From Oikopleura dioica (lineage: Eukaryota > Animalia > Chordata): a stretch of DNA of 64,000 nucleotides. Within the stretch, counting starts at the first letter, position 1. The number at the start of each line of letters is the position of its first letter. The notes beneath the pieces are model-generated. The model ran no database searches and was not told where the DNA came from. It saw nothing but the letters and a program-made list of their open reading frames with translations. Location: contig OU015569.1 in assembly GCA_907165135.1 (NCBI GenBank), positions 10,354,001 through 10,418,000 of the forward strand, read 5' to 3'. The position numbers and the translations under genes are program-made. Below, piece after piece: positions 17,245 through 44,239 of this stretch.

Positions 17245-17676
17245 AAGAACAATCGCTACTATAAAACCTGCAAAAAGTAATAAAATTTCCCTCTTGTCTT
17301 GAAAGTTTTTGATATCTTCCATAGTCACATGAGGGCTTGATATTTTCATCACGTGATTTTTACGCTGAGTAAAAAGATTAATGATTATTGTCTTGGGGGC
17401 AAAATCTACCGGTAGTGTCGTTTACTCGTCTTATAAAATCACTTAAGAGCAGGCGGCAAGGATTATTGTTCGTCTCATTGTCCGACTAGAAGCGTTTTGT
17501 GTGTCCAAACTACTTAGACCCCGCGCACTCGTGTGTGCCCAAGGGCGTCAAACAAAAATATTACGAGAAGTAGATCGGACGAATAGTTTTATGACTTTTA
17601 TAGATACTCGATCATCTTCGAGGACAGGAACCTTCTGAGCGAAAGAAAGAAATACTCGAAACATCAAAAGAAAAGA

Positions 17677-20600
17677 ATGAGCCAGAAAGACAAGTCAGAA
17701 CTCATTTATCGCAGAGTTCGAGAGATTTACGAAACGGAAGAGACGTTTGTCAATAAGCTTAGGAAAGGTCAACTTTGTCAGCTTTATTTGTTTTTGCTTA
17801 ATTACGCAGAAAGCGGCTAGTAGTAGAGACCGAATTAAAGAGAGTTCATCAGCGCTGGAAAGAAAGGCATCGAGCAGATACCCGAGCTGAACAATGGCCT
17901 CTGTGAAAAAATCTCAGACGTTATTCACGCCTTGCGTCCGGGTATAAAAGAACTAAACGTGTACAAATACTTCATTCTTCTATTCTAGTCCTTAATTTTC
18001 ACAATGAATATCTACTTATCAAGTTGAAAAAATGTGATGGGCAAATGGATGCAGGAATGAGTTAACAGAGCTCTGTAGTAAATTCGCGAATTAAAGTTAG
18101 TCACAGTATTTCTGTATTTTCTGTCTACGCGAGTAACTCAAGGATCAGACATCAGAATGTCAAAAGTTGCGGATATCTTCTGTGAACTGGACAACGAAAG
18201 TCTTTTTGAAGAACATTACCGGACTTATATCAAGCACTATGCAAAGTACACTCATTTTACGAAGCTGATGAGTCGGGAAGAATACGCGCCCATTCAAGAG
18301 CTGATTCAAAATAGCTTGAAACTCAAGCTCGGCCACGACGCATATCTTGTGGAGCCAATTCAACGGGTCTGCCGATATCCAATTCTCCTCAAAGCCGTGT
18401 TAAAAAGTGCGGAAGACACGAACTCTCCGGCAGCGGCAAAACTCGCGACGGCGACGGAAATCATGGAGAAGCAGGCAAGAGTGATCAACGAGCTGCAACA
18501 GACTGCGGACCATTTTATAGATGCGCGCGATGAATCTGTTGTCAGAAGAACAGTTAGAAAAGCTCGCGGAAAAGCTCTTCGAAGGGATAAAATTCACAAA
18601 GCAAAGGATCACAATTTTGTGTCGAAGTTTTTCAACCAGCCGACTTTCTGTGCCCACTGCACCGATTTTATTTGGGGCATCAACGCTAAGCAAGGATTCA
18701 AGTGCACTTGCTGCCAAGTCTCCGTCCACAAGCGATGCTACAAGTACATCAATTTCAACTGCACAAGAAGAAGTGATGGAACAATCAAAGCCTCACTAGA
18801 AACCAAAGCTCACGATTTCGCAGAACAGAACTATTATAAACCGACATTTTGCGGACACTGCGGCGTCCTGCTTGTCGGATTTACGAAACAAGGCCTGCAG
18901 TGTCGAATCTGCTCGCTTAACGTCCACCGCAAGTGCAAAGATCTGGTGGTGGGCTGCATTCCAGAGTCTGAACGCAATGAACGCTATGGCCGAATCAACC
19001 TCAAAATTGAAATTTATCAACGACGGTGCCATATTGATATTTTTCGTGCGCATAATCTACCTCCGATGGATGCTAATGGCTTCTCCGATCCCTTTGTCAA
19101 GATATCCATAGCTTAGGGTTTTAATCTTTTACTGATATTGACAAAGAGCAAACAAATAACACTTGCACATCTTTAGTAACAGTTTAAACGACTTTTGATC
19201 GTTATGAATTCACTTGAAAAACCCTAAAATAAGACCCAGAACCGAAAAATCAGAAAATCAAAAAAATGAAGACAGAAATAAAGTCAAAGAACCTCAATCC
19301 AATTTGGAACGAAAGTTTCGTTTTTGAAGTCGGCCAACTAGACGTCTCATCCCGAATTATCGTCTCTGTCTACGACCACGATTCCTTCGGCAGCAATGAT
19401 TTCATCGGTGCAACTTCTTTCTCCATTTCCGAAGTTCAAAAAAGCACTGTCGACGGGCTTTATCGTCTGCAAAATCCAAGAGATGGTCGCCTTTTCAATC
19501 ATTTGTTGGAGCACAATACGAACAAGTATGGCGAGCTCATAGGACTGATGAACATTAAAAAATCCGACGATGATAAATCGAAAGTTGCTCTTAGCGACTT
19601 TGACCTTGTATCCACGATTGGAACGGGGAGTTTCGGACTAGTGCTTCAAGCAAAGTTGAAATCTGGACGAAATGTTGCCCTCAAGAAACGCGGTTAAAAT
19701 AATAACTTTTCATCGTAAACAAATGTTGAAACTATTAGACCATCGAAAGTCGAAATAACCCGCATAAAAGTGCATCAGCAAAGGAGAACTCAATACCGAA
19801 GCAGACATTGATGCAGTTATCGAGGAAAAAAAGACGCTTCAGCTGTGCAGAGAGTGCAATTACATTGTGGACATTTTAGCTACGTTCCACACACCTGAGT
19901 ATGTGATGCTTGCTCTTGAATTCCTACCGGGCGGCGATCTGTACTTTCACATTATGAACTCTGAATTCAATGTCTTCTATTTGAACGATGTGCTCTTCTA
20001 CACGGCTCAAATTTCCGAAGCCTTGGATTTCATCCACACCAACAAGATTATCTACCGGTAAAAAGAGCCACTATATCACCAAGTATTTTCTAATAATGAT
20101 CAACACTCGCGAAAGAATGAATTTAGCGATTTGAAATTGGATAATGTCGTTTTGGATTCGAAGGGATACGTGAAACTGGTCGATTTCGGTTTGGCAAAGA
20201 GCGTGGAGGAAACAAACGGAAAGTCGAGAACTTTTTGTCAAGGGTCATTAAATTTGAGTTAGCTGCAGTCTTGTTATTAAATGCATTTATAACAAATATA
20301 AATGCTCAATTATTTTTGACCCCGAGATAAGTGGAACACTCGAGTACATGGCTCCTGAGATTTTGGCGGGATTCGAATATTCCTATTCTGTCGATTTCTG
20401 GGCACTTGGAGTTTTAATCTTCGAAATGATCTACTCGATACGACCATATCAATCCCACGACGAGGAGAAACTAAAGCAAATGGTCCTGGAGGACCCGATT
20501 CGCTTCCCAAGACAAATCGTAGAAAACACCATCCCTTCTTCTGTTCAAAGTCTGCTCAAGCTGCTTTTGACCAAGAGTCAAGATGACAGACTCAAAAGCT

Positions 20601-20910
20601 ATAGAGAAATGAAAGAACACGCGGCTTTTGAAAATTTCGACTGGGAAGGGTTGAGAAACCGGTCAATCATACCTTCAGTTATTCCAAATGTGGAGTCCAA
20701 TTTGAACTTCGACCCTGAGCTTGCACATTACAGGAAGTGGTTTTGCATTTTCTTTTTTTGGCATGGATCATGATTCATGGACGATTTTAAAAACCAAAAA
20801 AAAGTCCTCAATTATCGCAAGTGCAAAATGTAAATATCAACTTGGATCTGTTCTTCGACAACTTCGAGGAAATTTTCTGTGAAGACTTATTGATAAATTC
20901 TGCTAAATAA
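17677..20910 (+). CDS. RhoGEF (DH) domain fused to a conventional protein kinase C (C1A-C1B-C2-kinase)
   Basis: DH motifs: VREIYETEETFVNKL, VLNFHNEYL, YLVEPIQRVCRYPILLKAVLK. Pseudosubstrate-like RGKALR. Two C1 domains. C2 domain with MDANGFSDPFVK and YDHDSFGSNDF. Kinase motifs GTGSFG, VALK, YRDLKLDN, DFG, TFCGTLEYMAPE. Nine exons. Confidence 0.9.
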
Positions 20911-21111: not shown

Positions 21112-21822
21112 ATGAAAATTTCTGCATTATTTTTGAACGTTGTCGTAAGTTTTAAATCTTCTCCAGAGATAGAAAATTGACCCTCGAGATAATTAATAAA
21201 ACGAGTTCAGTTTTCTACTGATCCAACTTCGACCGAAGCTGCCGAACAGTCCAGTACAACTGTGGTTACAACGACAGGATCAGATTTAGCTGCTACAGGA
21301 GCTTCATCTTCTTCGACGGAATTGCCAAGTTCGTCGACGACAACAACAGAAACGCCAGCAGAGTCTGAGCCATCGGTTGTTCCCGTTTGCCCGCCCCAAA
21401 GTGTCCCATCCGTAGAATATGATATGAAAATCAAGACCACCGGAGATCTCTTCGCCGGCACAGATGATCCCGTCTACATCATGTTCAACGGAGAGAACGT
21501 TTCAACTAAACTGACTCAAATTCCGGATGACCCACAACCTTCTGACTTTGAACGAGGGCAAACAGAGTAAGAAGAAAAAAATTAAAAATAATTTTCAAAA
21601 GTTCTTCTCAGCGAATTTACAGTAACAGTCACTGGAATCGACGAAATCAAATCGGCGACAATCATCAAACCAGGAAACGACAGGTGGTACGTGGAAGACT
21701 TCTCGCTCACCGCTGGAAACTCTACTCTCGAGTTTGATTGTTTTAAAACGCGAGTCGATGGCTCCCAAAAACCGCTCGTTTGTACACTAAAAGAAGATGC
21801 TGCTGATGATAAATCTGAATGA
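21112..21822 (+). CDS. Secreted Ser/Thr-rich protein with a PLAT/LH2 domain
   Basis: TATA-like atataaa at about 21064. Signal peptide MKISALFLNVVFS, mucin-like stalk, then YDMKIKTTGDLFAGTDDPVYIMFNG...DFERGQTDEF...WYVEDF (PLAT). Two GT-AG introns. Confidence 0.8.
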
Positions 21823-22453
21823 TTACAGACACTTGTGATAATTTACTTGAATTCTAAATAGAATTTCTAAGAAAAAAAATTGTTAATCTCCATTCGATCT
21901 TTCAAGAGAATCTGGGCATATCTTGACCTGTTGTTGGTGCAAGAGTTTACGAAGAGGAAATTGCGAGCGAAGTTGACATAGTTTTAAGTTCTGTCGATTT
22001 ACTGTCTTGACACAACGTACGCATTTAGCACCTTCTCGGGGAAGACTACAGTTGTTGGCACATTTCGAGGCGAGATGAATCTGCATTAAAATAAATTCCC
22101 CTGGATAAATTTGGAAAATAAGCAGACAACGGGAAAATAAATTTTTGATAAGGAGAGACACAACGCGTGCCTGTTTTTGATCATCAGGAAAGTGTTTAGA
22201 TAAGCTTCCAGTCTATGAATTTTTCAAAACGCAGAAAGCAAAATCAATCCAAAAAAGTTGGCACTTGGCTAGACTGAAGCAAGTGTAGAGAGAAGTTTGT
22301 GCGTTTACTCTAGTATCGAGATACGCTTCTGAGGCGATAACCCCACTGAATGTGAAAAGCCCTTTCGATTAATAATGTATTTCATTTCGGTCGTTTATTA
22401 TAGTTAAGAAAAGATGCAAGAGTAAAGAAAAAATGTGAATACTGCACCAAGGC

Positions 22454-43703: not shown

Positions 43704-44239
43704 TTAGAAAGTCTTTTTAAAGCCGAACTTCTTCCTTTCGTAGAACAGGTCAGTCTTCGCCGAGCCAAGATTGACAATCTTTGGGCAACCATCTCTGTCC
43801 TACAAAAGATAAAGGTAACTTTCCTTCAATCATATTATTTTTCACCTTCTCGAGCTTGGTGCACTCACGGCAGTAGTACGCGTCCGAAATTCCTGGGCCA
43901 CCACAAATCACACAGCGACCCTGTTTAATTGAAACATACAAAAAAGTTTGACTTGAGCTTGATCTACCTGGAAGGAGCCGTAGTTACATTCGTCACAGAT
44001 ACGGACAAGGGTCGACGGTCGAACATAGGAGTCGCAAATGACACAACGACCATCACACTGGTCAAGGTTTATTAAATACTACTAGAAAAAGGGTATTGAC
44101 ATAACAATCATTCGAATGACCGAAAAATGTCTGGTTTATTGAAATTATCGAGCGTAAACCTCTTCTTATCACAAAGTCTTCCGATGGCAACACCAGCTTG
44201 CTTACGACAAAAAATCAAATCTGGATGATGCTTCGCCAT
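43704..44239 (-). CDS. PHF5A: PHD finger-like protein 5A (SF3b subunit)
   Basis: [25 protein letters not shown]|[14 protein letters not shown]...[20 protein letters not shown]. Four exons. Confidence 0.97.

What the first reader, a model, noticed from the sequence alone, without database searches (positions are those of the whole stretch)
17677..20910. RhoGEF DH domain fused to a conventional PKC
Seen: one uninterrupted ORF (18157-19116) contains the DH C-terminal motif YLVEPIQRVCRYPILLK followed by the PKC pseudosubstrate, C1A, C1B and the start of C2, so the fusion is not a splicing artefact. There is no PH domain after DH, and all five Ca2+-binding Asp residues of C2 are present. Known: conventional PKCs begin at the pseudosubstrate, and DH domains are normally followed by PH. 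Inference: DAG/Ca2+ could recruit a GEF or Rho-binding module and a kinase together, wiring PLC signalling directly to Rho.
Basis: partly seen in the sequence, partly recalled or inferred. Interest (0 to 1): 0.85.

Follow-up and report, generated by a model that had tools for sequence, protein, structure and literature searches.

The report
Larvacean RhoGEF–protein kinase C fusion
A small planktonic tunicate and several probable relatives carry a conserved gene, transcribed in a sister population, that joins a Rho-GTPase activator to a calcium/lipid-activated protein kinase C; I found no report of this pairing, which could let one calcium or lipid signal switch on a kinase and the cytoskeleton together.

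Summary
Confirmed and extended. The window is Oikopleura dioica (Okinawa assembly by size). A nine-exon, 857-aa gene (17677-20910) encodes DH (RhoGEF) - pseudosubstrate - C1A - C1B - C2 - PKC kinase, with no PH domain. One exon carries both the DH end and the C1 pair. The Bergen orthologue (UniProt E4YNY7, 5' end mis-modelled) is intact, with DH dN/dS about 0.035. One mostly spliced public RNA contig spans DH to kinase tail. At least four other marine plankton lineages, probably larvaceans, have the same fusion with different introns; three tested form a 100/100 clade with O. dioica. About 265 other PKC-like proteins fetched lack DH, and O. dioica keeps ordinary cPKCs. DH fold and key residues, five C2 aspartates and kinase motifs are kept; the hydrophobic motif has Glu/Asp instead of Ser. 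Best reading: C1/C2 replaces PH as a Ca2+/DAG-gated anchor for a Rac/Cdc42-type GEF. No activity is shown. Caveats: the C2-splitting intron is non-canonical and often retained, and there are no reads from this strain.

The parts
17677..17762 (+). Exon 1: start Met and DH helix 1 / CR1 with the conserved Thr-Glu (Glu aa 21)
   Evidence: sister-lineage reads and joints at 17763; orthologue L043 begins the same way
17841..17941 (+). Exon 2 (DH), after a GA-AG intron 17763-17840
   Evidence: junction phase also fits L043
17989..18054 (+). Exon 3 (DH CR2 region), after GT-AG intron 17942-17988
   Evidence: joint 17940>17988 GT..AG in 7 reads; spliced in L042
18055..18148 (+). GA-AG intron present in this genome, absent from the Bergen genome
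   Evidence: pairwise alignment with L013
18149..19110 (+). Exon 4, the fusion exon: DH C-terminal 60% (CR3, helix 6), linker, pseudosubstrate, C1A, C1B, first strands of C2
18337..18495 (+). DH CR3 (YLVEPIQR..RYP.LL) to helix-6 Asn-Glu (aa 198-199)
   Evidence: aligns to Tiam1 DH, E 1.4e-6; conserved in orthologues
18556..18594 (+). PKC pseudosubstrate (basic, Ala at aa 227)
   Evidence: Ala kept in all orthologues examined
18610..18765 (+). C1A zinc finger
18811..18960 (+). C1B zinc finger; Val where the DH-less paralogue and other PKCs have Tyr/Trp before the loop Gly
19024..19460 (+). C2 domain with five Asp, split by intron 19111-19232
19111..19232 (+). Non-canonical intron inside C2 (GC..AA, or CT..AG shifted by one base), ends pair as a 10-bp stem; retention would stop the protein after the C1 pair and first C2 strands
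   Evidence: shuffle p 0.002; retained in L042; spliced form indicated only indirectly
19233..19684 (+). Exon 5: rest of C2, hinge, kinase Gly-rich loop and ATP-binding Lys
19685..19769 (+). Non-canonical intron (GA..AA or AA..AG)
   Evidence: orthologous junction read in 7 reads and in L042
19770..20057 (+). Exon 6: kinase helix C Glu to YR of the catalytic loop
20127..20236 (+). Exon 7: catalytic Asp, DFG, activation-loop Thr
20237..20330 (+). Non-canonical intron (GT..AA or TC..AG) with paired ends
   Evidence: p 0.002; orthologous junction spliced in L042
20331..20733 (+). Exon 8: APE, kinase C-lobe, NFD motif
20805..20910 (+). Exon 9: C-tail with acidic hydrophobic motif (F-x-x-F-Glu, about 20854-20868) and stop
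   Evidence: orthologous junction spliced in L042

Best explanation
A lineage-specific chimera made from a duplicated conventional-type PKC and the DH domain of a Dbl-family GEF, without its PH domain. SHOWN: one intact gene and, in a sister lineage, one transcript; DH fold; conservation across several species; purifying selection on DH; ordinary cPKC paralogues retained. INFERRED: C1A/C1B/C2 take over the membrane-anchoring job of the missing PH domain. After PLC activation, Ca2+ (C2) and DAG (most likely C1A) bring the protein to the membrane, where the DH loads GTP on a Rac- or Cdc42-type GTPase while the pseudosubstrate leaves the kinase. Because DH helix 6 runs to within about ten residues of the pseudosubstrate, the closed kinase may also hold the GEF face out of reach, so that both outputs open together.
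For: Fusion exon. Intact 857-aa and 850-aa frames in two genomes; DH 84% identical at dS about 2.5, dN/dS 0.035. Spliced RNA contig L042 from the 5' end to the kinase tail, nearly 100% identical to the Bergen locus. Reads on both DH and PKC exons. Orthologues with DH, C1, C2 and kinase on one contig: L014-L016, L017, L020; DH, C1 and C2 start: L043. Clade 100/100, outside the nPKC clade. DH model pLDDT 87; top 34 structural matches are all DH domains. CR1 Thr-Glu kept in the three sequences where exon 1 is visible; CR3 Gln-Arg and helix-6 Asn kept in all. Best PDB sequence match Tiam1, then P-Rex and collybistin. Helix 6 continuous to just before the pseudosubstrate, and linker length nearly constant. 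PH as membrane anchor and DH alone as sufficient for catalysis: PMC8305018.
Against: No biochemical evidence. Seven of 20 tested human Dbl proteins have no GEF activity in vitro (PMC8305018). The DH is divergent (at most 21% identity to solved DHs) and the Glu after the helix-6 Asn is Ala/Ser in three orthologues. C1B, said to be the DAG-binding C1 in mature PKC (PMC12721161), lacks the aromatic loop residue. The C2 intron is retained in the only long transcript contig, whose first junction is also out of frame, so no single record shows the complete in-frame mRNA. Reads come from a sister lineage at low depth. Rac/Cdc42 preference rests on weak matches (E 1e-6 to 1e-10).
Confidence: 0.55

Rival explanations
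1. The DH binds a Rho-family GTPase or another partner but does little exchange. It targets or regulates the kinase, a convergent answer to the HR1 domains of PKN and fungal Pkc1, with signal flowing from GTPase to kinase.
For: Divergent DH with no PH partner; inactive DH domains are common (PMC8305018); acidic hydrophobic motif as in PKN and aPKC (comparison from my own knowledge).
Against: The residues kept are those of the exchange surface (CR1 Glu, CR3 Gln-Arg, helix-6 Asn) across species about 45% identical; an effector-type binder need not keep them.
Confidence: 0.25
2. In O. dioica the gene makes two working products: full-length DH-PKC and, by retention of the stem-closed C2 intron, a kinase-less DH-C1A-C1B protein of about 405 aa, a DAG-sensing GEF built like a chimaerin. 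Splicing of that intron would set the ratio.
For: Intron retained in L042; a loose-end read consensus is a letter-by-letter mixture of spliced and unspliced forms; the intron and its stem are kept in both O. dioica lineages with a compensatory change.
Against: L020 has no intron at this point, so the switch is not ancestral; retention may be slow splicing of a non-canonical intron, with the product degraded.
Confidence: 0.12
3. The DH is a structural cap or dimerisation module for a divergent PKC and no longer meets a GTPase.
For: The linker from helix 6 to the pseudosubstrate is conserved in sequence as well as length, as for a fixed intramolecular contact.
Against: The GTPase-facing motifs are the best conserved part of the DH.
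Confidence: 0.06
4. Artefact: misassembly, two overlapping genes, or a decaying pseudogene.
For: Three introns break the usual splice rules and an in-frame stop follows exon 4; automatic models of this locus are wrong or truncated.
Against: Same fusion exon in independent assemblies and in at least four other lineages; dN/dS 0.035; orthologous junctions of two of the three odd introns read in RNA, and the same two junctions are intron-free and colinear in L016.
Confidence: 0.02

Closest known systems
Conventional PKC (alpha, beta, gamma)
   Same: Order pseudosubstrate-C1A-C1B-C2-kinase-tail; five C2 Asp; all catalytic motifs; activation-loop Thr.
   Different: About 200-aa DH in front of the pseudosubstrate; kinase only 36-40% identical to a fish cPKC against 63% for the ordinary O. 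dioica paralogue; Glu/Asp at the hydrophobic-motif phosphosite; turn-motif Ser only in O. dioica; non-aromatic C1B loop residue.
Dbl-family RhoGEFs, nearest Tiam1, P-Rex1/2, collybistin/ASEF
   Same: DH fold, CR1 and CR3 motifs, long helix 6 with Asn.
   Different: No PH domain. PH-less human DH proteins exist (9 of 74, PMC8305018) but none is followed by a PKC regulatory region.
Trio, Kalirin, obscurin
   Same: DH and a Ser/Thr kinase in one chain, gained by recombination (PMC5499878).
   Different: They keep DH-PH, and their kinases came from SPEG/titin (PMC5499878), not from PKC; no C1-C1-C2 sensor.
C1-bearing GTPase regulators: Vav, GEF-H1/AKAP13 group, chimaerins, RasGRP
   Same: A C1 domain beside a GEF or GAP; chimaerins and RasGRP are DAG-recruited (own knowledge).
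   Different: Single C1, no tandem C1-C1-C2, no kinase; Vav and Lbc-type C1 domains sit with DH-PH.
PKN/PRK and fungal Pkc1
   Same: PKC-type kinase joined to a Rho-contacting module; PKN has an acidic hydrophobic motif (own knowledge).
   Different: HR1 domains read active Rho (effector); a DH would activate the GTPase (upstream).
UniProt E4YNY7 / CBY37185.1 (O. dioica Bergen)
   Same: The orthologue; Pfam already marks RhoGEF, C1, C2 and kinase on it.
   Different: Unreviewed automatic entry named 'protein kinase C'; it lacks the first DH exons and mis-joins the odd introns. No paper found.

Membership tests
Dbl-family RhoGEF | DH domain by profile | tested here: met
   Pfam RhoGEF E 2.1e-14; model positions 2-180 in genome scan
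Dbl-family RhoGEF | DH helical-bundle fold | tested here: met
   Model of Bergen transcript frame lacking helix 1, pLDDT 87; top 34 matches DH, best Z 12.9, rmsd 2.8 over 165 aa. The alignment held other DH pieces, so the model leans that way.
Dbl-family RhoGEF | CR1 Glu, CR3 Gln-Arg, helix-6 Asn | tested here: met
   residue roles from own knowledge; CR1 visible in three sequences only
Dbl-family RhoGEF | Tandem PH after DH (usual, not universal) | tested here: not met
   29 aa from helix-6 Asn to pseudosubstrate Ala; no PH hit
Dbl-family RhoGEF | Nucleotide exchange on a Rho GTPase | not testable with these tools
   needs assay
Tiam or another named Dbl subfamily | DH branches with the subfamily; subfamily domains present | tested here: inconclusive
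   Best hit Tiam1 E 4e-10, P-Rex 9e-8, collybistin 7e-6; no DH tree built; no subfamily domains
Conventional PKC | Pseudosubstrate-C1A-C1B-C2-kinase order | tested here: met
Conventional PKC | Five Ca2+-ligand Asp in C2 | tested here: met
   window, Bergen, L017, L020; L016 checked for the last three only
Conventional PKC | Catalytic Lys, helix-C Glu, catalytic Asp, DFG, activation-loop Thr | tested here: met
   (YRD instead of HRD, as in PKCs)
Conventional PKC | Phosphorylatable hydrophobic motif (F-x-x-F-S/T) and turn motif | tested here: not met
   F-x-x-F-E/D in window, Bergen, L017, L020; Ser-Pro turn site only in O. dioica; the paralogue L022 keeps Ser
Conventional PKC | Branches inside the cPKC clade | tested here: inconclusive
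   Own long branch, excluded from nPKC clade (98/98), unresolved among c-type sequences
Conventional PKC | Activation by Ca2+, DAG and phosphatidylserine | not testable with these tools
   needs assay
Trio/Kalirin/obscurin | DH-PH cassettes with SPEG/titin-derived kinase, Ig/FN or spectrin repeats | tested here: not met
   none of these domains; kinase is PKC-type
PKN/Pkc1 | HR1 Rho-binding repeats | tested here: not met
   no HR1 hit; N-terminus is DH

The most novel reading that the evidence does not exclude
The first natural PKC that is also a RhoGEF: a larvacean invention in which one Ca2+/DAG-driven opening releases both the kinase and a Rac/Cdc42 exchange factor, with C1-C1-C2 replacing PH and the pseudosubstrate doubling as the GEF latch.
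Probability: 0.35. Interest if true: 0.8.

Novelty: new variant of a known kind. Interest (0 to 1): 0.64.

Why it matters
PKC domain layout is very stable in animals, and DH domains almost always travel with PH. A conserved protein that breaks both rules is a natural experiment. It can test whether a second-messenger sensor can stand in for PH, and whether PKC autoinhibition can gate a fused enzyme. It would give larvaceans a one-molecule link from PLC/Ca2+ to actin remodelling, testable in a cultured animal with knockdown methods. It also shows that non-canonical introns hide such genes from automatic annotation.

Tried and rejected
(1) My first guess, a Fritillaria genome (from the intron stems), was dropped: assembly size and database names point to O. 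dioica. (2) An upstream start at ATG 17591 with an extra intron was dropped: Bergen has no acceptor there and L043 starts like 17677. (3) Canonical alternative splice sites at the odd introns (adding two residues, or losing seven in C2) were rejected for the two kinase introns by sister-lineage RNA and for C2 by synonymous conservation of the residues that would be lost; this strain itself was not read. (5) The first structure model lacked the first 84 residues and matched only C1 domains and generic helical bundles. (6) The Atlas feature search gave RhoGEF clusters at 0.88-0.89, a lead only. (7) The nearest O. dioica RhoGEF by profile (L028) is an ASEF/collybistin orthologue; the score (1e-8) is too weak to name it the donor. 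(8) The other species could not be named. (9) Seven paper searches on the fusion or on Oikopleura PKC found no description (and within the Dbl survey). (10) The joined spliced protein was not sent to any shared search, family or folding tool; those were queried exon by exon or with database records.

Full report
Source. The window lies in a genome of 64,281,565 bases in 19 contigs. This matches the Okinawa Oikopleura dioica assembly, 64.3 Mb in 19 scaffolds (PMC8008620). The closest database proteins are named O. dioica.

Observation. The ORF at 18157-19116 exists. Its frame hits Pfam RhoGEF (E 2.1e-14, model 60-180), two C1 domains (E 3e-31) and the start of C2. The downstream exons hit C2 and the kinase. 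A genome-wide RhoGEF scan covers model positions 2-180 at this locus, so the DH is complete once the three small upstream exons are counted. No PH domain is present: 29 residues separate the DH helix-6 Asn from the pseudosubstrate Ala.

Gene model. Nine exons give 857 codons with a single terminal stop. The Bergen locus (L013, the locus of UniProt E4YNY7) gives 850 codons with the same exons, less one intron. Identity by region is DH 84%, C1 89%, C2 93%, kinase 82%. For DH, dN is 0.087 and dS about 2.5 (ratio 0.035); dS was saturated for the other domains. The DH is therefore as constrained as the kinase. The joined model was built only inside local scripts, to check the reading frame and to compare with loci already fetched.

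Transcription. No listed run holds this strain's sequence. Reads from a sister lineage, nearly all under 90% alike, cover DH, C1, C2 and kinase exons at low depth and give joints at the DH introns and at the intron after the ATP-binding Lys. A 2705-base public contig, L042, is nearly 100% identical to the Bergen locus and lacks six of its seven introns, so it derives from RNA; it runs from the 5' leader through DH to the kinase tail. It is not a perfect mRNA: its first junction uses an acceptor 7 bases upstream and is out of frame (raw reads show the in-frame one), and it retains the C2 intron. Removal of that intron is indicated only indirectly. A five-read loose-end consensus is explained letter by letter by the spliced or the unspliced sequence, seven positions by the spliced one. 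The residues after the intron show synonymous changes, and L020 is colinear there without an intron.

Distribution. A search of 1.84 billion cluster representatives with exon 4 returned a few proteins that span the DH-C1 junction. Their contigs come from marine metagenome assemblies. L014-L016, L017 and L020 carry DH, C1, C2 and kinase in order on one contig; L043 carries the whole DH, both C1s and the C2 start. They are about 40-60% identical to O. dioica and have different intron positions. A C1-plus-kinase tree groups the window, Bergen, L016, L017 and L020 at 100/100 on a long branch, outside the novel-PKC clade (98/98) and unresolved among conventional-type sequences (L043 lacks the kinase and was left out). 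Several of their introns have non-canonical ends with terminal inverted repeats, which fits larvaceans (PMC13326754), but this is inference. None of about 265 other PKC-like proteins fetched has a DH-like stretch. That is a sample of top hits, not a census. O. dioica keeps DH-less conventional-type PKCs (L022, L023, L024), so this gene is an added copy.

DH domain. A model of the Bergen transcript frame, lacking only helix 1, has pLDDT 87. Its top 34 structural matches are all DH domains, best Z 12.9; the alignment included other DH pieces, so this test is not fully independent. The CR1 Thr-Glu is kept in the three sequences where exon 1 is visible; CR3 Gln-Arg and the helix-6 Asn are kept in all. 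That these are the exchange residues is my own knowledge; PMC8305018 confirms CR1 and CR3 as the GTPase-facing regions and DH as sufficient for catalysis. By sequence the best solved relatives are Tiam1, P-Rex and collybistin/ASEF, which suggests Rac or Cdc42 rather than RhoA; the scores are weak. Helix 6 is predicted to run unbroken to about ten residues before the pseudosubstrate, and the linker is conserved.

PKC part. The pseudosubstrate Ala, five C2 Asp, Gly loop, Lys, helix-C Glu, catalytic Asp, DFG and activation-loop Thr are kept. Two departures are shared across the family. The hydrophobic motif has Glu or Asp where the paralogue L022 has Ser, and the turn-motif Ser is present only in O. 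dioica. C1B has Val or Lys where PKCs have Tyr or Trp, while C1A keeps Trp. PMC12721161 says C1B binds DAG in the mature enzyme, so DAG sensing may be weaker or shifted to C1A.

Mechanism. Most likely (0.55) the C1-C1-C2 unit replaces PH as a Ca2+/DAG-gated anchor, and the DH activates a Rac/Cdc42-type GTPase as the kinase opens. Steric coupling through helix 6 and the pseudosubstrate is a further inference. Rivals: a non-catalytic GTPase-binding module (0.25), a second kinase-less product by intron retention (0.12), a purely structural cap (0.06), artefact (0.02).

Comparison and novelty. Both halves are known. DH-plus-kinase proteins exist (Trio, Kalirin, obscurin) but keep PH and use SPEG/titin-derived kinases (PMC5499878). 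That survey of 175 genomes mentions neither Oikopleura nor a PKC fusion in its main text; its supplements were not read. No paper on this gene or architecture was found; subscription journals are mostly outside the library. The architecture is visible in the Pfam marks of one unreviewed entry. I rate it a new variant of known kinds: a real, conserved, apparently undescribed domain architecture with untested function. Interest 0.64.

Noticed in passing
window 19111-19232, 19685-19769, 20237-20330; L013 3766-3954, 4404-4462, 4906-4967: Three introns fit neither GT-AG nor GA/GC/GG-AG: they read G-N..AA (or CA) or, shifted by one base, N-N..AG. Sister-lineage RNA fixes two junctions. Two of the three have ends that pair in both lineages (shuffle p at most 0.014), with an A-T to C-G compensatory change in the C2 intron. 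I found no description of this class in O. dioica, though non-canonical introns there are known (11-12%).
   Followed up: partly
window about 44058-44164, - strand: The PHF5A gene needs an intron of the same class (AA..AG or GA..CA) with a 7-base inverted repeat at its ends; noted earlier by the scan.
   Followed up: partly
window 18055-18148: GA-AG intron present in Okinawa and absent in Bergen, with CAG at both ends and a short inverted repeat; looks like a recent intron gain.
   Followed up: partly
window 17440-17604: Non-coding block more conserved with Bergen than the coding exons, covered by RNA reads; contains a conserved upstream ATG (17591) opening a short frame. Possible 5' leader or shared promoter.
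   Followed up: no
L043 2692-3171: Intron in an orthologue with a perfect 13-base terminal inverted repeat and a TAT duplication: a transposon-like intron.
   Followed up: no
L026 (G000:C2:10344980-10347918, about 6 kb before the window): A novel-type PKC gene lies about 24 kb upstream of the DH-PKC gene, on the opposite strand.
   Followed up: partly
L024, L025 (G000:C1:9156349-9158213; C2:2401329-2401898): Two more very divergent C1-C2(-kinase) PKC-like loci in this genome; L024 sits on a very long branch.
   Followed up: no
window 21207-21830: Downstream gene with a Ser/Thr-rich stretch; the matching position in Bergen (L013 5810-6624) carries a PLAT-domain gene.
   Followed up: no
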